Assembly (NCBI GenBank): GCA_963924565.1
Contig: OZ004614.1
Location: forward strand, 558,001 to 622,000
Direction: 5' to 3'
From: Ascidiella aspersa
Lineage: Eukaryota
Length of the DNA stretch: 64,000 nt
Part shown: piece after piece, positions 1 through 20,772 of the stretch
Position numbering within the stretch: the stretch's first letter is position 1
Layout: the number at the start of each line of letters is the position of its first letter
The notes under the pieces: generated by a model
What the model saw: only the letters and a program-made list of their open reading frames with translations
Told to the model about the DNA's origin: nothing
The model's database searches: none
Program-made: the position numbers and the translations under genes

Positions 1-650
1 TTCCCTGGGGACAAGATCGTACACGAAGCCGGTTCCGTTCCTCCAAAATAATCCTTTGACGCTAGGTCGTCTTTAAGGTCGCACGCTGCCGGTGCGGGGA
101 ATGTGAAGGAATTCTGGGCTGTTCGTACGAGAGGATCTTCCCGGGGGCCGTTGAAAGGGCGATGTATCTTCTTCGGAGAGAGACGATTGACTGTCGTCTC
201 TATAATTGTCGAGATATTTAGTCCGTTTTTTTCTGAGACTTGCCTGCTTTTGATTGCAATGTTCTGTCTTCAGATATCTTCCGAAGAACAAGGAGGTCAC
301 CAGTGAAGCGTAGAGGGATAGTTGGGAGCTATAAGAAGGCTGCTGACCCTATAGACGAGGGCCGACGGCTGCCTAAGTCTCTTACAAGTTCTTAATCCGA
401 CTCCAAAGGAGCAGGCCGCTAGAATACCTGTCCTTAACTTCTTGTACTCTAAGCAAAGACAATCCACTCAGTAGATAGTTGCTCTTAGAGTATATTCACA
501 AATCTCAGAAATACAGCGATAAACAGAGCGGTGATTCAAGCCGCTAATCAGTAAGACGTATAAAGTAGAATGAATTGTCAAATGCGGAAAAGCAATTCGC
601 TAGGTGCGGCGGTCACACGTCAGTGGACAATGATCACGTGTATAGTGACG
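1..650 (-). mobile_element. Possible 5' end (5'UTR/ORF1 remnant) of a non-LTR retroelement, truncated by the window edge
   Basis: GC-richer and compositionally distinct from the flanking AT-rich DNA. A minus-strand CACTGACGTGTGACCGC near 610-626 resembles the GACGTG internal-promoter motif of LINE 5' ends. No recognisable protein motif. Confidence 0.25.
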
Positions 651-1739: not shown

Positions 1740-2102
1740 CAGGGGTTCCCAAACTGTGGTCCGCGGACCATTGGTGGTGACGACTGCGCATGTGGTCCGT
1801 GGCTATATGATAAAAAATTAACTGTCACACATATACGTTGTACAGTGGGCTACGTAGTACGTACCCTTTCAATAATTGCCGCACCTGTTCACAACTCGAA
1901 GATTTCGAAATATTTTGCTATACACTATCGTAAATCTTACTTGTTGCGCGAAAATTAGTGAGTAAAAAGTTGTTGTAAGGCTGAGCTGACAAACGAAGTG
2001 AAGTTACAGAATAATTTAACTGTGTAGGTAATAACATTGCGGTCCGCGAAAAAAAAACTCACAAATAGTGGTCCGTGGTCCAAAAAAGTTTGGGAAACCC
2101 TG
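1740..2102. mobile_element. hAT (Charlie-type) MITE
   Basis: TIRs CAGGGGTTCCCAAACT / AGTTTGGGAAACCCTG; 8-bp TSD CCCTGAGC (1732-1739) / CCCTAAGC (2103-2110); subterminal GGTCCGC motifs. Confidence 0.85.
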
Positions 2103-2274
2103 CCCTAAGCAAATAAAAGTGATTTAATGTGTAACTATAAAATAACGCTTTTGATATTAAAATGGTGAAATAAAAACTTGCAAAAAAATCTTGAGGGCAA
2201 ACAACCTTGTTTCGTTTTGACGTTGTTATGATTATTCAATATTGAACTAGCTTTTCTATAGCAATGTTTTAAAC

Positions 2275-2563
2275 AAGTGTTTCTCAGCCGCCGGTCCGCA
2301 TCAACTTTCCTGCCGGTCTACTTTGACTTTATCAAACGTGACTTTGCTGCAAGTGCCAGTGTTGCGCCCAACCGTTTAAAAGTGGGCTGCAGCTCGTTAA
2401 AGTCTTAACATTTAAGTCCAGTTGTATACAAAAGCTAAAGAGACTTTAGTTAAATACTTCTGTCGTAATTACATTTTGGTTAGATTTTTTTGATGGTCCA
2501 CCGGTCCGCAAAATTTGTTCTGAAATTTTACCGGCCCGTAAGCTAAAAATTTGAGAACCACTG
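2275..2563. mobile_element. hAT MITE
   Basis: Degenerate TIRs AAGTGTTTCTCAG / TTGAGAACCACTG; TSD TTTTAAAC / CTTTAAAC; CCGGTCCGC subterminal motifs. Confidence 0.7.
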
Positions 2564-2881
2564 CTTTAAACTATTATATTTTTTTATACGTGCCGGTTCT
2601 TTGTCAGGTCGGTTGACTTATTTAAAGTGGAATTTTTGGCGATTATATTTTACTAAAGTATGGGGTTCTTAACTGGGGTCCGTGGAGTAGTTTTTAGCGG
2701 TCCGTAAAGGCCTAGTTGTAAGTATTAAAATATTATTTAAATTGTGGAATAAATATTTGGAAAAAAACGCTTTTGTGCCTTCTCCCTTGAGTGAGGTTCG
2801 AACTCACGACTTCCTGTGATAGCAGGTTAAATACGTAAAGCTGTGATCGTTGTTTGAAAAGCAGCTTCAGAAGGGCTGGAC

Positions 2882-3215
2882 CAGGGGTTCTTGAACTTAT
2901 TTTACCGCGGTCCCCTAACATTTTTTTGGCTTCGCGTGGACCGCGATAGGCAAAAATTTCAAAAAATGACGTCATAAATTGACGTCACATTACAAATAAA
3001 CTTCATAAATCTGTTGATTTCGTTCTAAAAACTGTGAAAGTGATATGAAGTTTTAATACAGTCAGTGCAAAACCGTTTGGTTTTTAATTAAACTGCTTTC
3101 TTTGAAAAATGACTTTTTAAGTATACACTAGTTCTTTAATTACGCCTTCATGAACCCCCTAAAACTAGTTCACGGACCCCCAAGGGGTCCATGGACCCCA
3201 TTTTAAGAACCCCTG
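2882..3215. mobile_element. hAT MITE
   Basis: TIRs CAGGGGTTCTT / AAGAACCCCTG; 8-bp TSD GGCTGGAC / GGCTAGAC. Confidence 0.85.
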
Positions 3216-3405
3216 GGCTAGACGCTAGATCTCAGTTGTTAATAAACACATATGTTTGACTTGTGTATGTATCTTTCATTGAAGTATAATCAATCAGGTT
3301 CAAAATTGCCGAAAAGGTTTGTATTTATTCACTAACACCTGTTGTGTCTTGTTGTGTTGTCGCTATTCTTGTGTTACAAGTTAAAAGGGCCACCTGAAGT
3401 GTAGA

Positions 3406-6400
3406 ATGCCTTCAGCAGGGATCCACACTTACCTGGTGTCCATTTACATCGCAATCATCACCACGCATTGTCTCGCAAACGCAGGTTCGCTACAAACCAT
3501 TGTTAAAAGTGCTTGCTGTTTATAATTCGCCATCGAAATACATACTATTGTGTCTGTTATTTATAAATGGCATTAAAATAAGCGTTTTTATAAAAAATAT
3601 GATGTGATTTGCAAATGTGTGTTTATCGACCAAAATTTAAAAATTCGAAGTAAAATTTGAACTTTAAGCGTTAATAAGTTTGTTGCAAGAAATAAGCTTA
3701 ACCCAAAACAGAAACATCCACCTAACGTGCTCTATGCACAAACTAAGATCTATTTAGTAATTTCATTTGCAAGTTTAGGAAAAAAGTATCTGCGCAAACC
3801 GTAATGGATGACGTCATAACCCCAGAAAAATGGTTGTAAAAAATAAGCAAAGTTTAGGTAAGCGAGTAGGTTTTTGGGAGAGTATAATTAAAAAATTTAA
3901 TTATAAAAACATTTGTCCAATGAAGGTTTCTGCAATGGCATCTTCTACACCTGCTTAACCAAAGGAAGCTTAATGAGCATATTTCCTTGTATAGATCGCC
4001 GACACATTATTGCATTATGCCTGGTTGTAACATTTTATATTTTCTTTTAGTTCCGACTTCAGAAAGACTTTGCGCAACAGAAGATGGAAAACATGAGAAG
4101 TTGTTCAGCATCTTTGAAAACTCGCCAAATGGGACGTAAGTTGAAATGTTTATGAGGCAACCTGTGTCGGAAACAAGTTATTATTGGAGCAAGTCAATTT
4201 CAACTCAATGGCGTTGACTTTCTCTAAGAATGACTCGGAATAAATTAACTAACCTAATTTTATTGAAAAATTCATTGATGATTAACTTCATTTCAACCCA
4301 AATAATTTTGTCCAAATACTTAAGTCAAGTGAAGTCATTGACTTAAGTCATTTACAATGGAAACAAACTTTTTGTAATGCAGCAATAAACGGCGTTTATA
4401 AGTTTTGTTAGAAAGGGACAATAAAATAACTAGAAATCTAAGCAACATGAATTTCTCGGAAACGTGTTTAAAACTTCAAATAACTGAAATTATTTAAATT
4501 GTGTCGCTTAAATTTTTAAAGATACTAACGCTGTGCAATGTCAGTACTAAAGTTAAACCAAATAACGTTGCTTGTTTTGTGTTATTAATTCCAAGCTTGG
4601 CACAATAGTTTACGTTTTGCAAACGTGCATCACAACCACCCACATGGAGTTGCAGTGGATTAGAAGTAATTAAAGTCTTTAAATGGTACAACTTTAATCA
4701 GCTTTACAACTAATTAATCTAGGATATTAAATTATAAGATTATGTAGAACTCGTTACTATGGCCATTGACCAGACTATATAAACCTAATCTTTGAAGATA
4801 CCCGGATATTCAGAGAAAAAGCGTGATTATGGCACTAAAAAAATTAAACAAATAAATATATTAAACCAAACATAGGTAAAATTATAAAAATCAAAATATA
4901 CAGATTTGCAAACGTGGAGGCCCCTACTGGAAAGACACAGATAGATTTTTGATTCCATTGCTTATATAGTAACTTTTTTCTATATTTAACGTCATGAGAA
5001 GAGAAAATAAGTCGACAGGAAAATTTTTTCGCCCATACTTGTTTCAAACAATAAGCTTTTAGTTAAAATTTTGTAAAATCACTTTTAACAAAGGACTGTA
5101 GATAAAACGAACGCTAATATCTCAATAGGTTCCCGGTATTTTTATGGAAAAATAAACCGCACTAATTATATTGTTTTAATTTGCTAGCTTGCCCAAAAAA
5201 TGTTTAAATTTAATAATGTCTTTTATTGCATCCCTTGGGTTACGAAAGTTGTGAGCCGTGTGTTTTAATATGCTGCTACCACTGCGTTAATGAAATCCAT
5301 GTCTACTTAATTTCAATGGGTCTCACTTTGCAGCGCCATATTAAGAGTATGGCTTGAAAGAAGAGACACTTGTAACAATACTAATGTAGTTAAACCTTGT
5401 TGAAATTGATCCAGTTTGTTCAAGTACCATAAGGCCTCTCAGAATATCACGTCTCTCACGTTTAGCTTTTGTACATTCTTTCCAACTTTAAAGCTATTGA
5501 GATATGTTTTTACTTTACAAAACAGAGTTAAATGATTCAGAGTAGCTTATAATATAGCCATTTATATTTGAATGCATTTTACGTGAACTTTAGATAAAAT
5601 TAATCTCATTTTCACTCAAAATATTCGTTTGACACTTTAAACCTAAGGGGCCATGAGCCTTTTTCAAGGGGTCATGAAAAAAATTGAAAAATAAAATTTA
5701 TTTCAGTATATTTTCTACTCCACTAAAACAAAAAACTTAAATTAAAATTTAATGAGCTCTTAAAGCCGCAAGAAGAGATAGCAACCCGATTGAGCTTTGG
5801 GAAAGATAGTTTGACCGCATTTTGGGCAAAACTTAGCAATTCATATCCTAAGCCTAATGAGATGGTCATGCCATGCTGTTGCCTTTCCCATCAACATATC
5901 GTTGTGAATGTGGGTTTTCAACAATGTTACTTCTGAAGACAAATCAGCGCAGTGTGTTGGATGTTCAATGTGACACGCGGCCACCGAACTAGCAATTAAG
6001 ACAAAAGGTTGGGAACCCCTGCTTTAAACCATGGTATTAGGCTTCCACCCATAGGTGTAATTTAAATCACTATGATTTCGATTCTTTATTGAGGCGGTGA
6101 ATTTAACTCATTTGTATATTCAAAAAAAAACTGAAATTCTCACAAAATCAGGTTCGAAAAATGCGATGATTTCCTTAAAAAAAAAATTCCATTTCATTAC
6201 TTTTAGTGATTTACGCGAAAAATGATTAATATTACAGTGTAGCAGATTATTTATCTTCCTTGCCGTACACTTTATATGATTGCACCGACCCGGACAGATT
6301 GTCTTTTTCGTTTCGCTCTCTTCCTGTGCTTTGTGTATTTGTCATTTTTATACTGAACACAAAACTACAGCAAACGTCTAACTTTAATCGTTTATTTCAA

Positions 6401-9400
6401 TTTCCATAAAGTATAAAATGCGGTGATTTGAGAAACAAAAGCTTTTCCTAAAACTTTACTGAATTGAAAACCCACAATTAAACCGTGAATAACTTCGGTT
6501 TAAAGAGATTTGACAGCCCCAAAAATTTAGTAATAATAAAATACTGAAATAAAAAACTTCACCCATTGCCAAACCATTGTTTAAACCGGGTCTTTTATGA
6601 CGTCATACACACGCTATTGTTTTCAGAGTGATCGGATCATTGGACGTTATCGGAAAGGCTTCGTCGGATGAGAGGAACGTAAACCTACGTGTAGTGCCCA
6701 CTGGGGGTCGCTGTGGCGCTGCGGATTGCGAGGATTGGATCGCCTTTGACCTTGCAACGCAAACTTTGACCTTGAGACTGCCGCAAGGTCAACATCTGGA
6801 CAGGGACGTGAGTCGTGAATTTTTGCTTTTAGAAATTGTTAAAGACTCGAGCGAGCGACGACTAGGGCGCGTTCATTATTTCGTACTCGTTTGAAGTTTA
6901 GGGAATTATTTTTTTGCTTATAACTTGAATGCAAATTTTTAAAATTACAACCGATTTGAACAAAATTGCAGATCTTTTGCCGGCTGGGATTAATCAAATA
7001 ATGATAAAACAAGGATCACGTAACAATAAACGAACTAAAAATTATTTTTGCTTATCATAGCATTCTATAACACCCATATGGGGTTATTTACGAAAAGAAA
7101 CCACTATGTGATTTACTGTTGGTCGCGTATTCCCAAGGTGGTAAGTTCGAATCCCACTGAAGCGCCAGACCTGCTGTATTACCAAACCGTATATTTTACC
7201 AATACTATTACGCGATGCCATTGTTTATAACAATCGAGCATTGATTAGGGCGAGGACGGAATCGACACCATAGAAATCACAATCGCTTGTTCTCCGCTTA
7301 CGTCATCAGAGCCTTTTGACGTCAACGTTTTGGTGACGATTAAAGTTGAAGATGTAAACGACAACGAACCGGAGTTTGTAGGGGAGCCTTACCACGTGCA
7401 AGTAAATGAGGTCAGTAATCTCAAGACAAACTAATAATGACAAAGTAGTATGGCTTTTACTAGTGTATACTGATCACCTTATATCCTTGCGTTTTGATTT
7501 TTAATTTAAACTTACCAAGTGCAAATGAATGAGGTCTGTTTAATCTCAAAACTAACCAACAATGACAAAACGCTATGGTTTGCCAGCCGTTCTAATTTTT
7601 GTTTCTACATTTTGCAGACATATAAAAGTACCATTGAAAAAAATCTGAATTTTTTCCTAGAATTTTAATGAGCACATCTATAATTGATATTTGTCGTGTG
7701 ATAAGTGAGTTACTTATTTAGTTGCTTTGGTACTACAGGAGATTAAAATATTTCAAATTGAAAAATATCTAAAAAATCGATATGTCTAACCGTATGCTTA
7801 TCACCTTATATCCCTGCGTTGTGATTTTCTTTTCATTTTGAACCACACGTGTAAGTTAGGTTAAAGGAATGTTATGGCGGTCTATATAGTCTGGCCATTT
7901 TATACCTATATTCTGTTACCAAATTTTAGTTAGATCTGCCTTTTGTAGAATTTGTGCAATTTTGCCGGATTAAAATATTTTAGGAGCACTAATAGGGGTT
8001 TAATTGTTTCAGCTCGCTCAAGTTGGATCAGCTGTTCTTACCGTCGCTGCAACTGACCGTGACCAGTCGCCTCATCTGGCATATAGCATCGTTCCTGACA
8101 GGGTAAGTGTGTCTAGAAAGGGATTTATATTTAGAATATTTCTTCATTTTGCTGTCGTTTTTAATTAAGATTTATTGCAAATATATGAGACAAAGTTGAT
8201 AAATCCATAGCGTTATAAACGAATGGCTTAATAGGTGTGCCATTTTTAATGACTTAATGTTCAATTTCATCACTTATAAGGAAAAAAATTGGTAGAGTTT
8301 ACATTTTTTGAACTATAATTATTTTAACGACTTGTTTATAGATTTTTGGAGCTAAAATGAACAAGATTTACTCGAAACGTAAATGTTACATTTGATATGT
8401 TGTTTACATTTGATATGTCAAACCGAAATGATGTGCAAATTTTCGTTAACGTCTTGTATTTTGGAGAATAATGGCTGGAGGTTGTAGTAAGACGTAATAA
8501 GAATATCAAAGCCCATACAGAAGTAGGAAGCATTTTGAACGTTTTGAATAACTCTTTATTCATTTTTAACATTCAAAGCCATTTGATATTTTTGGCTTTA
8601 AATTTATTATCAGGTTAAAAAAAATAAAAAATGATATAAATAAAATGTTTAATGTTTCCCACGATCAGAAGTGGTCTTCCTACTTCGATATTGCTCGAGC
8701 CATGGAGGGGAGAATCACTCTGAGGCGGAGGTTGGACTTCGAGGAGGTTGTTAGGAATAATGGGAGCAGCTTGGTGATCTTCCAGGTGGAGGTTGAGAAC
8801 AGAGGGAGGAACGGGAGCCAGGTGGTTGTCAGGAGGAAGAAGACGAACATCACGGTAGGAAGAAAATTTACGAAAGTCGGACTATAACTGAATGTGTGGA
8901 ATAAGAAATCTCTCCTCGCCCTTACACGTAAATGACGACAATGACTTGGGAGCAAAACTTCTTTAGGCTTTCATGTCCTTATTAAAGTTAAGCATTTATA
9001 AGTTCTCACTCGCCTTAATGAGGATTTTTATGCAAGCAAGGCCATGCTGTTCGAACTCACTGAGTGTGAGGTTCGAACTCACGACCAAATTCGAACCTCA
9101 CTGTAGGCTAGTTTTGCAAAGAAGATGCAGCAGGCAACGGTGCTATTTTTTTCAAATTTCTATGTTTTGTAAAGCACAACTCTTCCCCACAGGTTCAAGT
9201 TACTGACGGAGACGACCACCCGCCGAGGTTCGAACCCTGTACCCCAGTATCCGGAGCGTGCTTGGATGTGCGATATAAGGCGGTCGTACAACAAGGAACC
9301 ATGGTTTGTAGATATATTAGATGTGCTATAGCTAGTACATTGTCTCGATAGTCAAATGTTGGATTTTAACACCAAGGTCTTTGGATTAAATATCAATTCT

Positions 9401-12400
9401 TTTAATGTTTAATTATTACTGAATACTATTAAACAGACTATAGGCCATCCTCAGGCGAACAACTAGGATTATTTGTAAGCCGTAACATGTTTTTTAAAGA
9501 CGTCACAAAGTTACGTATAAACATGACGTCATAAATAGCTTACCCCCAAAACACCACACAATCAGTTTATTTTGTTTAAGATTGAAAAGGTGTTACTTGT
9601 ATGCTATCGATTAGCGCAAAGCTAGAAATCATTTAAGTTGCTACATACATATTCGAGTGCGCGTTACATATACATCATAATACAAAGCACGCGTCACCAT
9701 ACATTGCACTAGCATGTATACAAGTGTGTAAAGTAGTGAGAGATGTTGTTCTCCTTCCACGGCCGCCAGCTCAGCTCGTAGACGCGCTGTTGCAGAGATT
9801 ATGGACTTTAACGCAATTTTGTTAACCTTTATATTTGACAACCCCCAAAAATTTAATGCCGAAGTATTGCTGCTCATTTGGAAATTTCTTACGGAACCAG
9901 GTCGATCTACTTTTTGTCTACCTCACAATTTTCCTGTGCTGCCTTGTAAACAACTTTATTTTTTCGCTGTTTGAGGTTGGTAAAATACAGCTAATCGTTC
10001 TATAACTTGTATTCTTTTATCTAGAGCAGTGAAGAAATTATCTTGAAGCCCGCTCAATTATTTGCCTTCGATCCTGATTCGCAAATTTCTCAACCAATCA
10101 GATACTCTCTAATCGGGGGTTCCCCTGATACCTACAACTTGTACTTTTCCATAGCGCCATCTAGCGGTCAATTATTTCTTAAGCAAGCGCTCCCTAACGC
10201 CACCCTGTGTCCGACCTACACACTTCACGTTATGGTGAGAACTTCTACTGTAGACGTAATATATAACGTTTAAGTATCACTGTTAAAAATGATTATTATT
10301 TTTTCTTTACAAGAAACTCCACTGAACCTAATCTTGTTGAGATTTATGTGCACATAAGTATAGCTGATCAAAGCTAATAAAACACTGGTATTTACAGCAA
10401 ATGTTTCGGTCGAAAAACTAGTTTATTACACTGAACCTAATTTTACATACACAGCAAATGTCAACTATTTTTATTTTCAATTTTTGTCAATTACCGACTT
10501 TGTTTCATTCATTAAAAACAGTTGACTAATACAGCATTGATTTAGTGATATAGCGAATTAGTAAATTTTGTGGTAAATTTTACTCCTAAAGACATTAAAA
10601 CTAACTACTGTAGGTAGGTTCAAATTACCACCTTCATATTCAACCACACTTAAGTGTGACAAGGAATTAGCATTAGCTATTTATTGTGTGTTTACGCAGG
10701 CGAGTCAGCTTGACAATCCTGACATGAACAACGTGGCTGAGGTAGAGGTCAAAGTCACCAGAGCCGCATTTGACCTTCAAAAACCCGTGATTGCACAACA
10801 GGGGGAATCCCCCCTGCCATGGTAAGACATCAGAGATAAGTTTGTCAAATGAAGTGACTTTTGGGCGCTAATGTTACATTCGATTAAAAATAGAAAATCT
10901 GATTTTTAAAGAGAATAAAGCCACACTTATTTTTGTTGTGCGAAGCATTTTGCAAATTAAATAATTTTCTCTATAATTGAAATGAAAAACGGGAAATTTT
11001 GTTGGTCTGCAGTTCTACAACTTCCTAATATTATATGAAAAACGTTGTTTTGGTGGAAAATCGGTTATTATTCATCCAGACTGTTCTGTAGTGAACAAAA
11101 AGTTAAACTTATTTATATTATTAAAACAAAACGTAGTTAGCAGCAAACTATTATATTTTTTTTTATTTTTTCGCAGTTTCCTTGACGATTCTTACAGCAG
11201 CGAAATATCGACTGTGACGTCACAAGGCAAAGCGCTCGTCCTCCGAGTGATCGACGAGGATTACCCCGGGATAAAGCAACCCGAGTTCAAGTTCACCCTC
11301 ACCCCTAATAACGGGGAATTTTTCGTGACAAAGAGGGGCGTGGTTGGGGCCGACTTGCGGAAGCTTCGGGAAAGTGGGAAAAGCGATTATGACGTCACAG
11401 TAAGTTCGCGCGTATTTTCAGTTGTCGTATCTTTCATTTTTTTTCGTTTTCTGATGAATCGCGAGAAAAAAATTTTTTAACACATTTTAAGGCAGTATTA
11501 TTAGCACTACTTTTTCAGGCTGTCGTGACGTAATACGTCTGGAGTGACGTAATTAGCCTGTTGTGACGTAAAAGCATTAATGAAACTGCCGAGAATGGGG
11601 CATTTGGAAAACTTTTGTTAAAACATATTTGGAAAATATTTTCGACTGTCACGCTTTAGTTTTTTAACGTTTACAACACAAGTGAATTAAACTCGCATCG
11701 CGTTTGTCTACTGTTACGTCATAAAGGTGATAGCTGAGAACGATGACGCAGCTAACGATTCAAATCGCTACAGCGAACCCATGATTCTGCATGTCCAAGT
11801 TTCAACGAACGAGGGAAAGGCGGGTAAGATGAAACTAACAATATAAATGACTTGTCCGATAGTAAGGGATCGGATCAAAAAACGATACTAAGTTGCAGTA
11901 TAGGTACTTGTCCGGTACTTGGAATATAAGATTTTCAGCCATGTTTTGCAATCCAATCAGTTATTTATATCTTGAGGGGTAGGTTTATTAAAAAATAGAA
12001 TTGGTCGCTTTATAAGGAATCTTTCTTGCACGATACGTCAGTAGCATCCTGATGAAGATGTTCTGTACAGCACGTCGAAACGTCGATTGTTTATGTAATA
12101 CTGCTTGTGAGCAACACTTTGTAAACAGCTGAAGGAAACTAAACTTCATAAGTGAAGCAAGCTGTGACCCAAACTCCCATTTAAACGTTTCTATTCCGTC
12201 GATTTTGTTTGGTGACCTTAGTAATGACGTCATTTGGTATCGAACCGGATCGCGATATTTTTTAAGTATCTGTATCGGAATAAAATGTCAAGTATCGGAC
12301 TTTTCTCATTCTGTGGACAAAATATTTTTTGAACTTAAAGTTAAAAACCTGTCATAACGAAGTTGTTGAAAACATAACCCTTGAGATAATAAAGTAGATA

Positions 12401-15400
12401 GGGCATCAAGGCGTTACGTAAAATCCAATAATTCAAAGCGAGGTGGGATTCGAACCAACAACCCCGACCCTAAGGCGCTTTCTGTTCGTCAAAGAACTGT
12501 TTCGGTTAACACTAAAAGCATTAGTTGGACTTCTGGTAAATTACACGCGTATGTGTATCCATGCCAATAACCAGTGTTCCATCTAAGAAAAATTTTACTG
12601 CGCCAATATTTTATAACGTACTTTAACGGATTGGTTACTCGTCCGCAGCCAACGCCAGCGACCCGACGAACTGCTCCTCACAGGCTGGAAGCTTCGTGGC
12701 AGCTTTCGGGGTTTTCTGCGCTCTTTTCATCATTTGCATCCCGGTCATCATTCTGCTCGCCATCCAACTGAGGAAGTACAAAGCAATGAGCGCTCAGCAC
12801 ANNNNNNNNNNNNNNNNNNNNNNNNNNNNNNNNNNNNNNNNNNNNNNNNNNNNNNNNNNNNNNNNNNNNNNNNNNNNNNNNNNNNNNNNNNNNNNNNNNN
12901 NNNNNNNNNNNNNNNNNNNNNNNNNNNNNNNNNNNNNNNGACTTATAATTGACTTGATATATGACTTCACTTGAACTTGGATATTTTACAAATGGCTTGA
13001 CTTGGACTTAAGTTAAATTAGACTTTAGTTACTTCAACATTTTTAAAACACTGGTGATAAGTAAATGTCTTATTCTAGCTGGGAAGTTTCGAACCAGCTA
13101 TTACTTCCAGTGTTAACAAACTTGTATGTTGGCAGATGAACCAGTCGTTCGGGAAGAAGTACGATGGATTCAACTTCGCAAACTCGGCATTCTCGGAGGA
13201 CGCTGGGTCATTTAGAAGCTCCCTGAGGACTCCTGTGGAGGGAAGTGGGAAGATTCTGTCCTCCTCCATAGAGAGGATCGGTCACATGATAAAAGCTCCA
13301 ACTGTGGATGATGAAGTCCCGCACATCGCCCCTCTGCACTCTGTTAAAAGTGGGTGAATGTGGGGTAACTGTGGGTCAAAAGTGGCGAAACTGAGGTTAC
13401 TGTGGGTCAAAAGTGGGTGAAAGTGGGGTTACTGTGGATCAAAAGTGGGTGAAACTTCGGTAACTGTGGGTCAAAGATGGGTGAATGTGGGGTAACTGTG
13501 GGTCATAAGTGGTGAAACTGAGGTTACTGTGGGTCAAAAGTGGGTAAACTGAAGTTACTGTGGGTCAAAAGTGGGTGAAAGTGGGGTAAGTGTGGATCAA
13601 AAGGGGGTAAAACTGAGGTAACTGTGGGTGAAAGTGGGGTAACTGTGGGTCAAAAGTGGGTGAAAGTGGGGTAACTGTGGGTCATAATTGGGTGAAACTG
13701 GGGTAACTGTGGGTCAAAAGTGGTAAAACTGGGGTAACTGTGGGTGAAAGTGGGGTAACTCTGGGTCAAAAGTGGATGAATGTGGGGTAACTGTGGGTCA
13801 AAATGGTTGTTTTATGAAGACCTAAGTCTTACACCATTTTTTAAGAAAGTTAGCCAACTCGGTTCTAATTAGACAGTTTTATTGCAAATGTATAAACGGA
13901 CGACAAATTACTTAATCCAGTAAACAAAGTTTTTATTTCACTAAAATGCAATCAACAACTTTTCAACAAAAGAGTTCGGTAGGACCAGCCTGATCCTGTT
14001 TTTACTTTTAGTTGATTTAAAGAAACTACTTGGCAATTTACAAACTTACATATTATATACCTTTATTACACAACTTTTTGCCCCAGAACCAAAGACCCAG
14101 GTTAAGAAGGAAGACCCCCCAAGTATTGTCCCCTATGGGTCTGACACCCCCACCCATCTGCAGGAATGGAACAACGTTGTCATGGAGGTAAGGGGCAGTT
14201 CATGGTTAAATAGTAGTTTTAACAAATTAAATCGTTTATAGATATAAATATTTTGTGAATAAAATGAACTCGTTTTTTTAAACAAGGTAATTGCATTAAG
14301 AAGACACAAAAAAGTATTTAAATTATATTTTTTATATTAACTGTAATTTTAAAAAAAAGTTAAAACCTTTTTAGATAATTCAGCCAATTGCTTAAAAAAA
14401 TATAATAAATTGAGTACAAAGTAGTTTTTTTTTAATAATAACTCGTAGTGTGAATCTACTCATATTCCAGCACTCACTGAGCTTCGATCAGATCCGAGTT
14501 GAGAATTGGTTGAGCGAGCACGAGTTCAGAAAATGTGGGGTTGGGGAGGTCAATCTGGGGAACCCCCGACCTTGCTTCGTCAAAATAATTACAGGTGAGT
14601 AAAAACGACAAAGTTGCCCGACATTTTAAATTTTATTCCGGTAAATGATGTTTAAAATTGTGGCAGACCTTAAAAATAATATATTTTTTGTTTATTTATT
14701 TTAGTATATTTAGTGTTACAAATAAGTATGTAGGCCAGGGTTTCCATTTCCTAAAAAAGCGAAATCCAAGATACAACCATGACAGATTAAATAATCACCT
14801 GTTGGGTAATAATGTACTATTTGTGTTCATTTAGCTTGTATCTAATAAACACCAACCGTCTCATTCTAACTTTCTACCTAATTGGAATGCTTGAGGTAAA
14901 ATGTTTTTAACAGACACAAAATGGAACGTTAGAATTCCTGGCATGTTCTGAAAACTCTGAAAGTATGACAACTGTAATGTAGGCTCTCATGTGAGGCTTG
15001 GAAGTATACATTCCATTAAATAACAGACACCAATATGGTGTTTACTTAATACATTTCCGTGTAAGGGTAATTGTTAAATTATAAAGTTTACAGTAAGTGT
15101 GGCGTGGATTCATGTTGATTTTAGTTTACCACTGGCTGAAAACGTCGCAGAACCACTGATTTAAAGCTTCCAACATTGTTCTTGTTTGCTGAGCTTGATT
15201 CTTGCTTTAGGTAAATACCCTGATAAGCAGGCCATGTCTGACGACGTCTCAGCCATGAACCAGGTGCTCCACTACGCCACCTGCCGGAACCCAAACATCG
15301 TCAAGTTTTACGGATCGTGTGTCCGCAGAGGTGAGCTGATTGATTCCAAGCAATACAATCTAATGTAGTTGGGTACATCACTATGCACCGGAATGTAACT

Positions 15401-18400
15401 TGATAGTGAATGTCAAAGCCAAAGAGGTCGAGTATATTGACCTCATCTTGATAACGACGTTTTAATACGAACTTGTATCGTCATCAGTTGAAAAAATATT
15501 TCCGATGTAAATGTTTATTTTCCGTATTAACTGACAAAATGATACAAATGCGGGCATAGCAATAGTAATCAAAAAGTAGCTTATCTTGTAATTGTAATTC
15601 TTAACCAACGTTTTGGCAACCTTTCCAAGTCCTGAAGCTATGAAGGCGGTTAACAGTAAACATTACCAGAGGAGCTGTTTTTGAATATTATTTACCCACT
15701 TTGTTAGACAATTTTTCCAGTAGCAAAATACAACACGATTTCAGTTTGCTACGGGTGTTAATTTCGACATTTCGCTAACCCTCCTTTCAACCACAGAATG
15801 TCTTTACATCGTGAACGAGTTCGTTCCATCTCGAAGTCTCAGAAAGGTTTTAATCAGCAGCAGAATGCTCGAACATTCCGCGGTTATTTCAAGTTTATCA
15901 GGGTCACAACTGCTCAACTTTGTTATCGGTAAGTCTTCTTTAACCTTCTAACATAAAAGGTGTTTAATTAAACTGCATACACAGTATTACACATAGGCTA
16001 CGCATCAATTGTAAAATTGTTCTTCCGCCAATATTTATATTAATAAATGTCGACGTTTCGATGACCTATACAGGAAATCCTTATCAGGATCAACTGGGCG
16101 AAAAATGTATATAGTTGCAATAATATTGCCATGATGAAGATTTTAATAGGTTATCTAAATGTCGAAACATTTAATAAAAAAAAGTATATTCAGTAATTTT
16201 GTACAAAACTAAATGGTGTGTGAACTTTTTTCTTTAAAAGACCAAAAAGCAATAATTCCGTAACTATTTCATAAGCCTCGAGAAAAACATTATTTAAATT
16301 CTGTCCACTTTTTAAAGTAAATCGCAAGAATCACTTCGTTTTTTCGTAGACATAGCCGAGGGCCTTTCCTATCTCCATGACAACGACGTGCTCCACGCAT
16401 GCTTGTGCGCAGGTCACGTGCGCATCACTGATTCGCTGACCGCCAAACTGACCGAATGCTGCAGTGAGACCTCGCAGCGGTACAAACTGGTGGGTGCTTT
16501 GGACGCCATCTTTAGTCTGTTTAAATTAAATTGATTGATAGCAACTGGTAAATATTTGTTGGGCCAGAGAGTTGTGGATTGCGTTATTTTTTACTGGTGT
16601 CTTTTTACTGAAGATAATTGTCATTTATGTCCAGACTTTTGACAAAAACCCTTGTCTACTTATTTTACCAGTGGAGCCAAAATTAATGGATTACAAAGAT
16701 AAAAAAGGAAAAGAATGGGTGATCTTAAAATAACCCTTTGAAAACATTGAGCATTCTGCGAAGATAACTTTAAGATTTAATTTTTTCACTTAAAGCAACA
16801 TTTGTCGAAGGATATTCGGGTTTTAATTTTAAATCCTGTTGGATTGGGATTAATATTTGTATCGGCTTTACTCCTGACCTGGTCGCATTTACGAATAAAA
16901 TCGACGTTTTATGCAGAAAAGTAAGAGATGGCTCGCACCTGAAGTTGCCGCTAAGCAACCTTACTCAAACAAGGCTGACGTGTAAGTTTACGTGTGAAAA
17001 TAAAATGAAAAATAAAACAAAATAATTATTAGAATTTTGAGAATTATTTTTAATAATTGTTTTTTTTAAATAATTTTTAAATTTTAAACTTAATCGGTGG
17101 GTTAACTTAAAAATTAAAAAAATAATTGTCTGTAGGTTTTAGTCATTTTAAAATCACCCATAACGTTAATTTTCAAACATCACAACTAACCTAGAAATGA
17201 TTTACATTTTGTTCATGATAAAAGTCATATAACTTGAAAGTGCGTGTTTTCATATATTTCAGATGGTCGTACGGAATTCTGGTCTGGGAAGTTCTCTCGC
17301 TAGGTGGCACACCTTTCGATGACGTCAGTGAAACCATGGTTACCGATTATGTAGAACGGCAGCTGGAGACCGGGAGTTCGGTGTTGCCCGTGACCAGGTG
17401 AAAGGGATCACGAAAATCTTTATTATGATCACTAAAATTATGTTATGATCTCCTTAAAACCTATCATGATCATTAAACCTTATAATGATCGCGAAATTTA
17501 ATCATGATCATGAAAACTAATCACAATCACGAAAAACGAATCATGATCACTAAACTTTAAACGAAGCACATTTTGTATAAAGTAGCACAATACTAGATTG
17601 AGTAAAAACTTAATAAAGTCAGAAAAAACACACCCACACCACAACGTAAAAAATTTCTGACCAATTTAGTCCCTGAGAAAAGTTCATAGAAACGAAACTT
17701 TGACGTTTAAACTTGCTTCGCTTTTGAAATTGTGAATTTCTATGTTCACAAAAACACGACCAAGAGGCTTTGGATCACTAAAGTAATTATGGTCACTTAA
17801 TCTAATCCTAAGCGCAAACCCCCCCCAAAAACATTATAATTATTTTTTTAGAAACACGACCAAGAGGTTTTGGATGATGCTTCAGCGATGTTGGGCAAAA
17901 GAAGCTCACCAGCGCCCACTGATGGAGGATATTAAGAGCTTGTTGTCGAACATGAAAGCTTCGTCGGTGAGAAAAGTGGGGAGCGGGGTGTATGGGGACC
18001 TCGCAATAACATGTGGATTGTTTTTTCTATTTAAAAACTTCTTTTTTCTTCCTAAAAAAAGGATTGGCTTAAAATTTGCTCAAGCTAAAATAGAAAAAGT
18101 ATTTAAGTTTTTTTATTCACCTAAAAAATATTTGAATGATTATGAGTAAAAATTTTGTTTTGTAGTTATTTTTTTCTGTACTCAAATAATAATAAACATC
18201 ATTTTCATTTCGACCGAAAACATAAAACGCAACAATAAAATATTTTTTTGGAAGCGGTTGCAAATTCCCAGGGCGGAAGTTCGAATTCCATCATAGCTTT
18301 AATAAGGAATAGTGAGATTTCTTTCATACAACAATAAAAAAAAAGAAACAAAAAATTCATGTATTGTTTTATAGGAACTTAAAATGGATTTTTTTATTTT

Positions 18401-18495
18401 GTTTAATTTGTTTTCAATTTTTTTATCAGCAGAATGCGATCACGGTTGCGAAGGCGCCAGGATACCATTTCTTTCCCGCCTCAACAATCCAATAA
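3406..18495 (+). CDS. Cadherin-related (CDHR5/PCDH15-like ectodomain) single-pass receptor with a tyrosine-kinase-like pseudokinase domain, ~970 aa, 22 exons
   Basis: Phase-consistent exons: 3406-3484, 4051-4135, 6627-6807, 7249-7410, 8013-8102, 8669-8854, 9193-9303, 10025-10234, 10700-10821, 11177-11399, 11727-11823, 12649-(gap at 12802), 13136-13349, 14087-14187, 14471-14594, 15211-15330, 15797-15928, 16350-16489, 16917-16981, 17263-17397, 17852-17966, 18430-18495. Signal peptide MPSAGIHTYLVSIYIAIITTHCLA. Cadherin motifs LDRD, DVNDNEP, ATDRD, LDFE, DGDDHPP, AFDPD, IDED. TM segment FVAAFGVFCALFIICIPVIILLAI. Kinase-fold motifs [47 protein letters not shown]. Confidence 0.88.
5643..6021 (+). 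mobile_element. Internally deleted hAT (Charlie/Buster, ZBED8/FAM200-type) transposon with a transposase C-terminal remnant
   Basis: Perfect 8-bp TSD CTTTAAAC (5635-5642, 6022-6029); 3' TIR GGTTGGGAACCCCTG; frameshifted peptide AFWAKLSNSYP..LLPFPSTYRCECGFSTMLLLKTNQRSVLDV matches the hAT dimerisation domain. Confidence 0.85.
8470..8560. repeat. Dispersed ~90-bp repeat family (GGCTGGAGGTTGTAG..AATATCAAAGCCCATACAGAAGTAGG..TTGAACGTTT)
   Basis: Further copies at ~26253-26475, ~28354-28500, 41256-41670, ~44090-44170 and ~59865-60060; several occur as inverted pairs. Confidence 0.8.
12045..12090 (+). ncRNA. Minimal Penelope-type hammerhead ribozyme motif
   Basis: CTGATGA (12049-55), extra A, GATG..CGTC stem II, GAAA (12077-80), CG, TC. 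Stem I is short (ATC/GAT). Confidence 0.5.
12802..12939. other. Assembly gap (138 N) interrupting the TM/juxtamembrane exon of gene 1
   Basis: Run of N. Confidence 1.
13346..13802 (+). repeat. G-rich minisatellite, ~33-bp unit AAAAGTGGGTGAAAGTGGGGTAACTGTGGGTC
   Basis: About 14 tandem degenerate copies are visible. Confidence 0.95.
17405..17555. repeat. Degenerate ~20-bp tandem repeat (ATCATGATCACGAAAA-like)
   Basis: Periodic ATGATCA motifs immediately after a splice donor. Confidence 0.7.
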
Positions 18496-20772
18496 ACGTC
18501 ACAATGAGTGGAAATATTCATCCGCGCAACAGCGACATCCAGCGATTAAATATAAAGCGTGGGAAAAAAGAACGAAATTCCACAACTTTACAAAAATAAA
18601 TAAACAAAGATTTAGAAGTGCTTTTCGTATTCAGTTTCTTACGCGACAAACTGACGTTTTCCAAAATGGCCTTTATTGTTATTACGCGTCCTATAGCGTC
18701 GGCCGGATCGGTTGAACCTGTTTAAAGTTAGAACAAAACATCAAGTTAAACTGATTTACCACCACGTCCTGTCTAAAATAAAAACAAAAGTGATCTCGTT
18801 TTATTTCAGCTTTATAAAGCTTTGTTTTATTCGATCTTAAAGTTAGTTATTTGCAGCGTTAGTTGTTTTTTTGCGGCTTCTACATGGAATTTTAGGATAA
18901 AATGAACTGCTAAAAAACAAACAAATTCAAATTTAATTTTCCGAACTTTGTTAGTTTCAATTACAAAACCAAGGTGTGCTTTTAGGTATGTTAGTTGTGA
19001 TGTATTATTCTTTGCAAATTTTACTTTGTTGTCGTATTTGCTCGTATTTTATTCGTAAAATAGAAAAAAATTACCAACTTCTAAAGTATTGAAACTAAGA
19101 TCTCTTATAAGATTCGTAAAGCTCGAAAGTAAAGGACACGAGGAAAGTCGGAAAGTGTTAAAAATAGCAACTTTCGCATTTAAGCAATCTATGCAGAGAT
19201 TAAGATTTAGGAAATGACGCAATTTAAGGTCAAATCAATCTCAAGATTATTTTAGAAAAGTATGAAAATATTAATTAATGTAAATTAATTTATTTCTTCT
19301 TTATATATAAAATAGATTTAAATATTGAACGTTTATAATTTACCTAAAATTAGTTTTATTAAAAGACCTAAAGTGGCTAGCGTTTGACCTAGATAGATAG
19401 CCAAGTGACAATCATTAACGGAAAACATATTTTTGCGCAAAAGAAGTTATTTACGGCTACCGAATGTTTTTTTTAGCACTTTATAATATAATAGCGTGAA
19501 TTTAAAGCGAAGTTTTTTTTGATTTCATTGTTAGGCTATAAAAACACACTTTTTTGCTTCATATCGAACAGTTATAATTACTTTTTGATGTTCAAGTTCA
19601 TAATTTAGCTGAAATTAGTTCACCTGTGGTATTTGGCCTAAAATACAAAGAGTTTCATTCATTAATGTAAAAAAGTTTGCTTTATTGCGAAGTTAAAATG
19701 GTCACTTGCTTTATTGCGAAGTTGGAAATAAATAAACTTAAAATAACTTCAAAGATATTTCATTAATATAAACAAATATATTTCTCTTCAAGCTGAATAT
19801 AATAGTGAGCCTACAGGTTTTCATATTGAAGTTGAAAAATATGCTATAATTTGGTAAAAACAAAACATTGGTGTTTTCCATCTAGCCACACCTTGTAATA
19901 AAAATGATCGGCAATTATTACGGGGAAGCGAGAAGCTTGTAATAAACAATTGAGTGATATCCTGTTGTAGCGAATATCGTGGTAGAACTTGTACAACTGC
20001 TGAAGGCGTCACACTTACGTGGCTTGCAGCCCTCGGGCCATTTGTACCAACTCTCGTGGTAACAGACTCGTCATAACTTGGTTGGGAAGCAATTTGTTAA
20101 GGTTAGCTGCTTGCAAGCAATAAGTGGATTTTTTAAGTTTGTTAAACCTTTGTATTTGTGGCATACATAGTTTAGCCAAACGAACATTTCTTAACTGTTT
20201 TTAGAAATACCTGCAAAGTGTTGTTGTAGTAACCTAACAAAATTTGGAAGATTTAAATACCAGGTTTGGTAGAATTAACGAATTAAGCCGAAAGCGGTTT
20301 TATTGGCTTTTTTTGAAGAATATGTGAACGCTACTGCTGCGGCACTTTGCGCAATGTTATCAAATTTAAATGTTGCACAAATTTTATTTAACTTTAGTTT
20401 TAATTGAATCAAAGGATAAGGGCGATACTATATATAGACTTTGTGATGAAAATTTTAAAAGTAAGTTTTAGTTGTCACAGCTTGAAGATTTCATTTTAAC
20501 ATCAGTGGATTTTGTCTTTTAAAAAGTTGAGATACAACTATTATGCTACGCCACTATTCAAGGTGTTCTTACCAAGCATCCGATTCATAACCAAATATAA
20601 TAGATTCAGGAAAAAACGAAGATGTTAGAAAACCATAAAATGGCTAAATTTGAAACTAATCTTGCGAGTTTTAACTAATAAACAACATTTTGCGATTTTC
20701 TTCCAGAATTTGTGGCTTTAAATTAAAAAACAATAAGAAACCTCTCGGCCGACTTTTGCATCCAAATCTACA

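What the first reader, a model, noticed from the sequence alone, without database searches (positions are those of the whole stretch)
3406..18495. CDHR5/PCDH15-type microvillar cadherin ectodomain fused to a tyrosine pseudokinase
Seen in sequence: about four cadherin repeats with clade-typical features (N-terminal Cys and FSIFENSPNGT, DGDDHPPRFEPC..C..Y, YSLIGGSPDTY) and a GFNFANSAF juxtamembrane motif like CDHR5 GFDNQAF. The kinase fold that follows has lost the Gly loop (LSEHEFRKC), HRD (HAC), the catalytic-loop Asn (AGHV) and DFG (ECC), but keeps the beta-3 Lys and the C-lobe motifs. Established: cadherin-RTKs are rare (RET, Cad96Ca/Stitcher) and active, and CDHR5/PCDH15 have no kinase domain. 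Inference: a lineage-specific adhesion receptor using a dead kinase as a scaffold, possibly at microvilli or mechanosensory cells.
Basis: partly seen in the sequence, partly recalled or inferred. Interest (0 to 1): 0.8.

Follow-up and report, generated by a model that had tools for sequence, protein, structure and literature searches.

The report
Sea-squirt cadherin receptor with dead kinase
This sea-squirt gene appears to encode a cell-surface protein with four cadherin adhesion repeats outside the cell and a well-conserved but catalytically dead tyrosine-kinase fold inside, a receptor design not found described elsewhere.

Summary
Observation confirmed. On the + strand, 3406-18495 reads as 22 exons with AG/GT borders and compatible phases. 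They encode a signal peptide, four cadherin repeats, a short stalk, one membrane helix, a roughly 110-residue juxtamembrane stretch and a tyrosine-kinase fold.

The kinase fold lacks the first two loop glycines, the alpha-C Glu, the HRD Asp, the catalytic Asn and the DFG Asp (it reads ECC). The beta-3 Lys and the C-lobe motifs remain.

The N gap begins 12 codons after the membrane helix and hides that exon's 3' end and donor site, so the frame across it cannot be read here. A second ascidian-like species (metagenome contigs L003/L004, no gap) has the same exons, order, intron positions and phases from cadherin repeat 2-3 through to the stop. That includes the phase-1 junction joining the last cadherin exon to the membrane exon.

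Clavelina lepadiformis models (RefSeq name 'FGFR4-like') carry the same dead motifs but begin at the membrane exon. No RNA data were available.

The CDHR5/PCDH15 'microvillar' label is not supported: the repeats are generic cadherin. The kinase fold belongs to no named RTK family, with a weak lean towards arthropod Wsck.

Verdict: a new variant of receptor tyrosine pseudokinase, seen only in ascidians so far. The scan had not noted it on other DNA.

The parts
3406..3508 (+). Exon 0 (proposed): ATG and signal peptide ending in A-N-A; donor phase 1
   Evidence: Reading of frame 1 and splice sites. No ortholog covers it, so it is the least certain exon. An in-frame ATG at 4017 is an alternative start.
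4051..4135 (+). Exon 1: mature N-terminus with Cys and FSIFENSPNG (start of cadherin repeat 1)
   Evidence: strong acceptor tatattttcttttag, donor GAC|gtaagt, phases 2 and 2
6627..6807 (+). Exon 2: body of repeat 1 up to LDRD
   Evidence: Donor GAC|gtgagt was chosen because it gives a repeat of normal length. No Pfam or PDB match for this exon alone.
7249..7410 (+). Exon 3: end of repeat 1 with the DVNDNEPEF calcium linker, start of repeat 2
   Evidence: (solved cadherins to E 3.3e-12)
8013..8102 (+). Exon 4: repeat 2 (ATDRD...YSI)
   Evidence: (Cadherin, E 0.066)
8669..8854 (+). Exon 5: repeat 2 (F-D-I...LDFEE)
   Evidence: (Cadherin, E 0.14)
9193..9303 (+). Exon 6: linker DGDDHPPRF and a Cys pair, start of repeat 3
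   Evidence: orthologous exon in L003/L004 with the same phases
10025..10234 (+). Exon 7: repeat 3 (FDPD...YSLIGGSPDTY)
   Evidence: (Cadherin 27.7 bits, E 3.7e-6)
10700..10821 (+). Exon 8: end of repeat 3; its linker lacks the DxNDN motif
   Evidence: same position and phases in L004; only a 13-residue match
11177..11399 (+). Exon 9: repeat 4 (VIDEDYPG...)
   Evidence: (41% identity to L004, E 1e-12). No PDB cadherin match for this exon alone.
11727..11823 (+). Exon 10: end of repeat 4; donor GG|gtaaga, phase 1
   Evidence: L004 donor AG|gtaaat, also phase 1
12649..12801 (+). Exon 11 (visible part): 15-residue stalk, membrane helix, stop-transfer LRKYK. The acceptor needs 1 base from the exon before. 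The 3' end and donor are hidden in the gap.
12802..12939 (.). Assembly gap (138 N). It hides 3k+2 coding bases and the donor site of exon 11.
   Evidence: Not filled or looked up.
13136..13349 (+). Exon 12: juxtamembrane part with KYDGFNFANSAF and DDEVPHIAPL
   Evidence: 54% identity to L004; phase-0 acceptor and phase-1 donor in both species
14087..14187 (+). Exon 13: juxtamembrane part (IVPY)
14471..14594 (+). Exon 14: QIRVENWL, degenerate Gly loop RKCGVGEV, beta-3 FVKI
   Evidence: 77.5% identity to L004
15211..15330 (+). Exon 15: alpha-C helix (Glu replaced by Asn), beta-4
15797..15928 (+). Exon 16: beta-5, hinge, alpha-D and alpha-E
   Evidence: 78.6% identity to L004
16350..16489 (+). 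Exon 17: catalytic loop HACLCAGHV and ECC in place of DFG
   Evidence: (80% DNA identity to L004)
16917..16981 (+). Exon 18: short activation segment, RWLAPE
17263..17397 (+). Exon 19: WSYGILVWE...LGGTPF (alpha-F)
17852..17966 (+). Exon 20: CW...RP (alpha-H and alpha-I)
18430..18495 (+). Exon 21: conserved tail NAITVAKAPGYHFFP and the stop codon
   Evidence: 76% identity to L004

Best explanation
One gene of about 15 kb and 22 exons encodes a type I membrane protein of roughly 980-990 residues. Its parts in order are a signal peptide, four extracellular cadherin repeats, a 15-residue stalk, one membrane helix, a disordered juxtamembrane segment of about 110 residues with several conserved short motifs, a complete tyrosine-kinase fold and a short conserved tail. 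Repeats 1-2 have a canonical calcium linker, repeats 2-3 a variant one, and repeats 3-4 none.

The kinase fold cannot transfer phosphate. The catalytic Asp, the magnesium-binding Asp, the alpha-C Glu and two loop glycines are gone in every ortholog seen. Even so, this part is the best conserved part of the protein.

The likeliest working (inferred, not shown) is this. The cadherin part binds a partner on another cell, or a ligand, in a calcium-dependent way. The dead kinase and the juxtamembrane motifs then act as a docking or allosteric platform for active kinases or adaptors, as PTK7, ROR, RYK, HER3 and EphB6 do.

Shown here: the exons, their phases, the domain identities, the loss of catalytic residues and the conservation across ascidian sequences. 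Inferred: that all exons sit on one mRNA, and the signalling mode.
For: Gene model:
- All 20 visible acceptors are AG and all 20 visible donors are GT, and every junction is in phase.

Single unit:
- In L003/L004, exons 6-10 (cadherin) lie collinear and upstream of the membrane, juxtamembrane and kinase exons.
- Intron positions and phases are identical for exons 6-12. This includes the phase-1 join of the last cadherin exon to the membrane exon.
- In both species the membrane exon has no in-frame ATG ahead of its helix and begins at a strong acceptor.
- tblastx finds no conserved block in intron 10 (best E 0.66). It shows one collinear chain of conserved blocks that coincides with the listed exons.

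Constraint:
- Only exons align at DNA level between the two species, and exon 17 reaches 80%.
- Protein identity is 33-41% in ectodomain exons, 45% in the membrane exon, 54% in the juxtamembrane exon and 50-79% in kinase exons.

Dead motifs:
- The HRD Asp is absent in 4 of 4 ortholog sequences.
- The DFG Asp is absent in 4 of 4, with an invariant Cys-Cys (ECC three times, NCC once).
- The catalytic Asn is kept in 1 of 4.

Fold:
- An AlphaFold2 model of the Clavelina ortholog has 10-residue block mean pLDDT of 65-98 over residues 171-450, and the juxtamembrane part 68-173 is below 50.
- Its best solved neighbours are the Tie2 and FGFR1 kinase domains, with target TM-scores of 0.74-0.83.
- By sequence the top solved match is Tie2, E 7.6e-28.

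Copy number:
- Exons 7, 9, 12 and 17 each match only themselves in the 308.6-Mb genome.
Against: - There is no transcript evidence at all. The one run search returned 2 holders, and none is on record as RNA.
- The three Clavelina models (413, 368 and 470 aa, from ENA and RefSeq) all begin with a signal-peptide-like Met stretch just ahead of the membrane helix and contain no cadherin part. This may be read-through of the intron before the membrane exon, or it may be a real short form. I could not see the Clavelina DNA.
- The donor of exon 11 and the frame across the gap are unseen.
- Exons 0-5 have no ortholog coverage, because L003 starts at its contig end and L004 at the flank limit.
- Nucleotide binding, binding partners and expression are untested.
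Confidence: 0.72

Rival explanations
1. There are two genes. One is a cadherin-repeat protein ending after exon 10. The other is a short-ectodomain membrane pseudokinase beginning near the membrane exon, like the Clavelina models and similar in layout to STYK1. The two are merely adjacent or share an operon.
For: All three Clavelina gene models start just before the membrane helix. Tunicates use operons and trans-splicing (my own knowledge). No RNA was available.
Against: In the window and in L004 the membrane exon has no in-frame ATG before the helix. The helix itself is conserved as protein (45-58% identity). The phase-1 donor of exon 10 and the matching acceptor are conserved in both species. 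No conserved alternative first exon lies in intron 10. On its own, the cadherin part would have no membrane anchor.
Confidence: 0.13
2. It is a decaying pseudogene of an active cadherin-type RTK, and the lost motifs are simply damage.
For: Many catalytic residues are missing.
Against: All 22 exons are open with intact splice sites. The same substitutions recur in four divergent sequences. The 'dead' exon 17 is the best conserved stretch at DNA level, while introns do not align.
Confidence: 0.02
3. It is a divergent ortholog of RET or Cad96Ca that lost activity in ascidians, not a separate family.
For: It has four cadherin-type repeats ahead of a tyrosine-kinase fold, as in RET. RET kinase scores 88.8 bits, close to the top of the list. 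No RET_CLD1 match was found elsewhere in the genome, although the control was silent too.
Against: No RET_CLD family matched at E <= 1 in any of the 10 ectodomain stretches. No RET chain reached the E limits used (1 or 5) for the five ectodomain exons searched against solved structures. There is no Cys-rich domain, and only 15 residues separate repeat 4 from the helix. Tie2 (100.4 bits), ROS (96.1) and FGFR1 (89.8) score as high or higher. No Cad96Ca sequence was obtained, so that half is untested.
Confidence: 0.1
4. It is an atypical but active kinase that uses other residues, for example the Glu of ECC together with the retained beta-3 Lys.
For: The beta-3 Lys, the third loop Gly and an acidic residue at the DFG position are kept. 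The fold is complete.
Against: No acidic residue sits at the catalytic-base position in 4 of 4 sequences. The Asn is lost in 3 of 4. The alpha-C Glu is lost in 3 of the 3 sequences that cover it.
Confidence: 0.05

Closest known systems
RET (vertebrate and insect receptor tyrosine kinase with cadherin-like domains)
   Same: Four cadherin-type repeats, one membrane helix and a tyrosine-kinase fold. A passage of PMC8662651 seen calls cadherin ectodomains unique to the Ret family among RTK families.
   Different: No Cys-rich domain and no RET_CLD profile match. Repeat 1 has a canonical DxNDN linker. The kinase is dead and is not specifically RET-like by score.
Cad96Ca / Stitcher (insect cadherin-RTK)
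   Same: Cadherin repeat plus tyrosine-kinase fold (recalled from memory).
   Different: As I recall it has one repeat and an active kinase. Here there are four repeats and a dead kinase.
Human receptor tyrosine pseudokinases (PTK7, ROR1/2, RYK, HER3, EphA10, EphB6, STYK1)
   Same: Membrane receptors whose kinase fold lost catalytic residues and signals by scaffolding or allostery (passages and Table 2 of PMC13259870). The depth of loss here resembles EphB6 (HRS....S, RLG) more than PTK7, ROR or RYK, which keep HKD....N.
   Different: None of the eight has a cadherin ectodomain. The ECC motif with its invariant Cys-Cys is not among the states in that table. STYK1 keeps HKD....N and has a 22-residue ectodomain.
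Arthropod Wsck ('putative inactive tyrosine-protein kinase Wsck')
   Same: It is the best non-ascidian hit of the Clavelina ortholog in the word search (113 bits, 34% identity over 233 residues). Both share L-C-A-R in the catalytic loop, VPKI before the DFG position, RW.APE, and a similar tail after the kinase. In a 23-row tree the ascidian sequence sits beside the Wsck clade with support 87/78.
   Different: The Wsck ectodomain is WSC plus fibronectin-III, not cadherin. Seen from Wsck, FGFRs score higher (about 150 bits) than the ascidian protein. The tree has long branches and lacks RET, ROS, PTK7 and Cad96Ca. Named Wsck rows were all arthropod.
CDHR5 / PCDH15
   Same: Cadherin repeats including a calcium-free linker. 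A Protocadherin-15 chain is the top but weak solved match for exons 7 and 5 (E 0.0058 and 0.58).
   Different: Four repeats against eleven in PCDH15 (recalled). No mucin stalk. Exon 3 is closer to CELSR1, protocadherins and classical cadherins. A kinase fold follows the membrane helix.

Membership tests
Cadherin superfamily | Extracellular cadherin repeat detectable by profile or by similarity to solved cadherins | tested here: met
   PF00028 in 3 of 10 exon stretches (E 3.7e-6, 0.066, 0.14). Each is below the 28.8-bit whole-protein cut-off because introns split the repeats. Exon 3 matches solved cadherins to E 3.3e-12.
Cadherin superfamily | Calcium-binding linker motifs (xEx, DRE, DxNDN, DxD) between repeats | tested here: met
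   Read. Repeats 1-2 are canonical (ENS, LDRD, DVNDNEPEF, DRD). Repeats 2-3 are a variant (LDFEE, DGDDHPPRF, DPD). Repeats 3-4 lack DxNDN.
Tyrosine-kinase fold (TK group) | Match to PF07714 and to solved tyrosine kinases; complete two-lobe fold | tested here: met
   Ortholog P0079 matches Tie2 at E 7.6e-28. Model against Tie2 and FGFR1 gives target TM-scores of 0.74-0.83.
Active receptor tyrosine kinase | GxGxxG, VAIK Lys, alpha-C Glu, HRDxxxxN, DFG | tested here: not met
   Only the Lys and the third Gly remain. HRD reads HAC, Asn is replaced by His, DFG reads ECC and alpha-C Glu is replaced by Asn in the window. The same classes of loss occur in the orthologs.
Receptor tyrosine pseudokinase (functional class) | Kinase fold without catalytic residues, kept under constraint, in a membrane receptor | tested here: met
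   (kinase exons 50-79% identical between species while introns do not align).
RET | RET-type cadherin-like domains (Pfam RET_CLD1/3/4) | tested here: not met
   No RET_CLD family at E <= 1 in any of 10 ectodomain stretches. Power is low for single exons.
RET | Cys-rich domain between the last cadherin-like domain and the membrane | tested here: not met
   Only a 15-residue stalk with one Cys lies between exon 10 and the helix.
RET | Kinase domain groups with RET | tested here: inconclusive
   RET scores 88.8 bits against Tie2 100.4, ROS 96.1 and FGFR1 89.8. No tree with RET could be built.
Cad96Ca | Kinase or ectodomain groups with Cad96Ca | not tested
   No Cad96Ca sequence was returned by any search.
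CDHR5 / PCDH15 clade | Ectodomain repeats closest to CDHR5 or PCDH15 | tested here: inconclusive
   Protocadherin-15 is top for 2 of 5 exons but weak. It is not top for exon 3. Two exons gave no cadherin match. No CDHR5 chain appeared in the rows listed.
CDHR5 / PCDH15 clade | Architecture: mucin stalk (CDHR5) or 11 repeats (PCDH15), and no kinase | tested here: not met
   Four repeats, a 15-residue stalk, and a kinase fold present.
Wsck | WSC and fibronectin-III ectodomain | tested here: not met
   The ectodomain exons give only Cadherin. WSC matches in the genome lie elsewhere.
Wsck | Kinase domain groups with Wsck | tested here: inconclusive
   The tree places it beside the Wsck clade at 87/78 with a long-branch warning. 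Reciprocal ranking is not met.

The most novel reading that the evidence does not exclude
This is an undescribed class of receptor tyrosine pseudokinase. A calcium-dependent cadherin adhesion module is wired to a deeply dead kinase fold that is nevertheless the most conserved part of the protein. Its pseudo-active site carries an invariant Cys-Cys in place of the F-G of DFG, which could act as a redox, metal or lipid switch. The cytoplasmic part may descend from the same old bilaterian lineage as arthropod Wsck, with the ectodomain swapped (WSC and FN3 in arthropods, cadherin in ascidians) and the lineage lost in vertebrates.
Probability: 0.2. Interest if true: 0.75.

Novelty: new variant of a known kind. 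Interest (0 to 1): 0.55.

Why it matters
Receptor pseudokinases are few, and a passage of a 2021 survey of tyrosine kinases calls a cadherin ectodomain unique to the Ret family among RTK families. Here a cadherin ectodomain is joined to a dead kinase fold in the sister group of vertebrates. That would be a clean natural case of domain shuffling producing an adhesion receptor that must signal without catalysis. Strong conservation of the dead catalytic loop and of the Cys-Cys motif gives a concrete site to mutate. It also shows that the public Clavelina model named 'FGFR4-like' is misnamed and may be truncated at its 5' end.

Tried and rejected
Searches and tests that gave little:
- Searching for full-length annotated orthologs. 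The all-library search with exon 17 gave 77 proteins at E <= 0.001. I read 5 of the 77 (P0003, P0009, P0012, P0015, P0042). Three are orthologs and two are unrelated multi-kinase proteins. The other 72 were not read; most had several matched stretches and 25-45% identity.
- The word search with Clavelina P0079, whole and as residues 176-470, found only the Clavelina cluster as ortholog. No hit carried PF00028 (21 and 20 rows).
- The Wsck kinase region gave 221 proteins at E <= 1e-20. None of the 120 listed carried PF00028.
- Searching the own genome with Wsck gave 38 matches, none in the window, because the window's exons are too short for this test. A reciprocal-best test was therefore not possible.
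- L003 and L004 proved to be one species (99.5-99.8% identical over the two long aligned blocks; 2 differences in 1,996 exon bases against 22 in 10,307 other bases). They are useless for dN/dS.
- RET_CLD1 gave no match in the own genome, and the control rang nowhere, so this says nothing.
- ARAGORN found no tRNA in 1-20000.
- The literature searches surfaced no paper describing a cadherin-ectodomain pseudokinase or this ascidian gene. I saw search listings only, except for passages of PMC8662651, PMC4898815 and PMC13259870.
- The supplementary intron tables of PMC4898815 might allow an intron-position comparison with RTK subfamilies. Supplements were closed and I did not ask for them.

Considered and rejected:
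- The stop-free stretch before exon 17 (SQESLRFFV...) is not coding. The real acceptor is at 16349/16350.
- A start at the ATG at 4017 is less likely than exon 0, because the hydrophobic stretch there is the translated polypyrimidine tract of a strong acceptor.

Not done:
- Read laying was not used. Both holders appear to be DNA assemblies: each holds about 300 million letters, close to genome size, and X1 holds 78% of a mostly intronic stretch. They cannot show expression, and laying them over the gap would mean reading its letters from another copy, which is barred.
Every search was done exon by exon or with natural proteins, and the protein length comes from arithmetic on exon lengths.


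Full report
**What is in the sequence.** The window lies in a 308.6-Mb genome (G000, contig C8, 558001-622000). This fits the orthologs found here, the closest named one being from the ascidian Clavelina lepadiformis. Listing AG acceptors and GT donors around each stretch gives one chain of 22 exons. All 20 visible acceptors are AG, all 20 visible donors are GT, and each junction keeps the frame. The visible exons sum to 2,935 bases, about 977 codons. The part hidden in the gap must add 3k+2 bases. Every search was made exon by exon or with natural proteins from other species.

**The gap.** The only N run is 12802-12939. It begins one base after the codon for the His of ...LRKYKAMSAQH, 12 codons after the membrane helix. 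The letters after it look intronic up to the acceptor ...tgttggcag|ATG at 13135/13136, which opens exon 12 in phase 0. So the gap hides the last few codons and the donor of the membrane exon, not a gene boundary that can be seen. The frame across it cannot be checked in this assembly.

Orthologous DNA from another species (L004, no N) has the same membrane exon. It runs on for nine codons past the aligned E-M-S and ends GCG|gtgaga in phase 0. It is followed by the orthologous exon 12, opening in phase 0 with M-K-E-S-F-G. The three Clavelina protein models also run from the helix through the juxtamembrane part into the kinase fold.

**Domain identities.**
- Pfam, exon by exon, gave Cadherin in 3 of 10 ectodomain stretches (E 3.7e-6, 0.066, 0.14). 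It gave PK_Tyr_Ser-Thr in 3 of 10 cytoplasmic stretches (28.4, 23.1 and 13.3 bits; cut-off 23.1).
- Exon 3, with DVNDNEPEF, matches solved cadherins to E 3.3e-12.
- Exon 19 matches 385 solved sequences at E <= 0.01, and all 60 listed are tyrosine kinases.
- Reading the exons gives four repeats. Repeats 1-2 have a canonical calcium linker, repeats 2-3 a variant (DGDDHPPRF), and repeats 3-4 none.
- A 15-residue stalk and a helix of about 24 residues followed by LRKYK come next.

**Orthologs.** A search of 1.84 billion representatives with exon 17 gave 77 proteins at E <= 0.001. I read 5 of them. Three are orthologs:
- P0009: Clavelina lepadiformis, 413 aa, with siblings of 368 and 470 aa. The 470-aa one is RefSeq XP_076817508.1, named 'fibroblast growth factor receptor 4-like'.
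- P0003: JGI metagenome, 122 aa.
- P0042: Logan, 83 aa.

P0003 led to two metagenome contigs, L003 and L004. They are one species, 99.5-99.8% identical over the two long aligned blocks.

tblastn of the Clavelina protein gives ten collinear segments in each of the window, L003 and L004. This includes a 65-base exon (16917-16981) that I had missed by eye.

**One gene or two.** The points in favour of one gene are these:
- In L003/L004 the window's cadherin exons 6, 7, 9 and 10 have clear counterparts (E 1e-5 to 6e-15). Exon 8 has a weak one (E 0.36). All lie in the same order and strand directly upstream of the membrane exon.
- Intron positions and phases are the same in both species for exons 6 to 12. 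In both, the last cadherin exon ends in phase 1 at a strong donor, and the membrane exon starts at a strong acceptor that needs exactly one base.
- In both species the membrane exon has a stop upstream in frame and no ATG before the helix, so it cannot start a protein.
- The helix is conserved as protein (45-58% identity).
- tblastx finds nothing conserved in intron 10 (best E 0.66). Along the gene it finds only one collinear chain of blocks, which coincides with the listed exons.

Against this, all three Clavelina models start with a Met and a signal-peptide-like stretch right before the helix and lack cadherin repeats. That stretch ends in ...A-V-Q, as the end of an intron read through to its CAG would. 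Without the DNA I cannot tell read-through from a real short form. I put one gene at about 0.85 for this species.

**The kinase fold is dead but constrained.** Aligned with fish FGFR1b (P0130) and others:

| Motif | Window | Orthologs |
|---|---|---|
| Gly loop | RKCGVGEV, only the third Gly in register | same pattern, (K/R)KCGVGEV |
| beta-3 Lys | kept (FVKI) | kept |
| alpha-C Glu position* | Asn | Asn in Clavelina, Gln in L004 |
| HRD | HAC | HAA, HGA, HGS |
| Catalytic Asn | His | Asn, Ser, His |
| DFG | ECC | ECC, ECC, NCC |

*Identified by recall as the first Glu of S-E-M-E-M-M in FGFR1b, on an ungapped stretch.

RW.APE, DVWS(Y/F)G, LGG.PF and CW...RP are kept, and the activation segment is about eight residues shorter than in FGFR1b. 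So the catalytic Asp and the DFG Asp are missing in 4 of 4 sequences, and the Cys-Cys is present in 4 of 4.

Between the window and L004 only three stretches align at DNA level, all exonic, and the best is exon 17 at 80% over 122 bases. Protein identity is 33-41% for ectodomain exons, 45% for the membrane exon, 54% for exon 12 and 50-79% for the kinase exons.

An AlphaFold2 model of the Clavelina protein was built from a 52-row alignment. It has mean pLDDT 73, a confident two-lobe fold over about 175-455, and a juxtamembrane part 68-173 below 50. Foldseek puts Tie2 and FGFR1 kinase domains first, with target TM-scores of 0.74-0.83. This is a pseudokinase, not a pseudogene.

**Which family.**

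*Kinase part.* The Clavelina protein scores Tie2 100.4, ROS 96.1, FGFR1 89.8, RET 88.8 and PTK7 87.0 bits against solved structures, so no family stands out. In the word search its best non-ascidian hits are arthropod Wsck proteins (113, 98, 87 bits). BLASTP against Artemia Wsck gives 34% identity over 233 residues.

The two share L-C-A-R in the catalytic loop, VPKI, RW.APE, a similar tail after the kinase, and an N-x-A-F stretch in the juxtamembrane part. A 23-row tree puts the Clavelina sequence next to a tick sequence and the Wsck clade. Support is 87/78, with a long-branch warning, and RET, ROS, PTK7 and Cad96Ca are absent from it.

Seen from Wsck, FGFRs (about 150 bits) are closer than the ascidian protein. 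None of the 120 listed relatives has a cadherin domain. So the Wsck link is a lead, not a result.

*Ectodomain.* No RET_CLD profile matched, and no RET chain came up within the E limits used. A Protocadherin-15 chain is top for exon 7 (E 0.0058, beside protocadherin gamma-C4 at 0.014) and for exon 5 (E 0.58). Exon 3 is closest to CELSR1, protocadherins and cadherin-8, and exons 2 and 9 match no cadherin. The ectodomain is a divergent, generic cadherin. The CDHR5/PCDH15 label is not supported, and the 'microvillar' idea has no evidence.

*Copy number.* The gene is single-copy: exons 7, 9, 12 and 17 find only themselves in the genome. Unchecked first-reader notes report 'CDHR5-like' cadherins on other pieces of this genome. 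They are not close paralogs of exons 7 or 9 by that test.

**How it likely works (inferred).** The protein is a type I receptor whose cadherin repeats bind in a calcium-dependent way. Its cytoplasmic part signals by docking.
- The dead fold may pair with or present substrates to an active kinase, as reviewed for the eight human receptor pseudokinases (passages and Table 2 of PMC13259870).
- The disordered juxtamembrane segment offers conserved short motifs: K-Y-D-x-F-x-F-x-N-S-A-F, D-D-E-V-P-H-I-A-P-L and I-V-P-Y.
- The N-x-x-F motif could bind PTB-type adaptors. This is my own knowledge and is speculative.

**Novelty.** A passage of PMC8662651 calls cadherin ectodomains unique to the Ret family among RTK families. 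The text of PMC4898815, which used Ciona sequences, does not contain the word cadherin. Five literature searches surfaced no description of this gene or of a cadherin-ectodomain pseudokinase; these are search listings, not proof of absence. I rate it a new variant of a known kind. The lack of RNA evidence and of full-length orthologs keeps the interest moderate.

Noticed in passing
window 13346-13807: A 32-bp minisatellite (about 14 copies, 80-90% matches) begins exactly at the donor of exon 12. Each unit repeats donor-like strings (AAAA|GTGGGT, GAG|GTAACT), so the exon is followed by an array of possible cryptic 5' splice sites.
   Followed up: partly
window 17406-17559: Short tandem repeats (19-38 bp units) in the intron after exon 19.
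   Followed up: no
window 2691-2816, 9002-9103, 12422-12583, 56880-57155: Translations with ...EVRTHD... or ...GFEPTTP... or ...VRFELTT... recur in introns and flanks, as tRNA-derived SINE-like repeats often give. ARAGORN finds no tRNA gene in 1-20000.
   Followed up: no
window 26567-27518 (+): Two open stretches that look like kelch-repeat exons (…GNLIYISGG…, …DSIFVAGGN…) of a neighbouring gene.
   Followed up: no
Clavelina lepadiformis XP_076817508.1 / CAK8697128.1 (P0079, P0009): The public models are named 'FGFR4-like' or 'unnamed protein product'. They carry HGA and ECC in place of HRD and DFG, so they are pseudokinases, and they may lack upstream cadherin exons.
   Followed up: partly
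window 16316-16349: The open stretch just before exon 17 (SKSQESLRFFV) is intron read-through that by chance resembles the end of exon 16 (…LLNFVI). The true acceptor is at 16349/16350.
   Followed up: yes
chain 8t7t_A: Among solved chains, the dead catalytic loop of exon 17 matches residues 405-445 of GCN2 (VVHKVLSASNVLV), which also lacks HRD, about as well as it matches active kinases.
   Followed up: no
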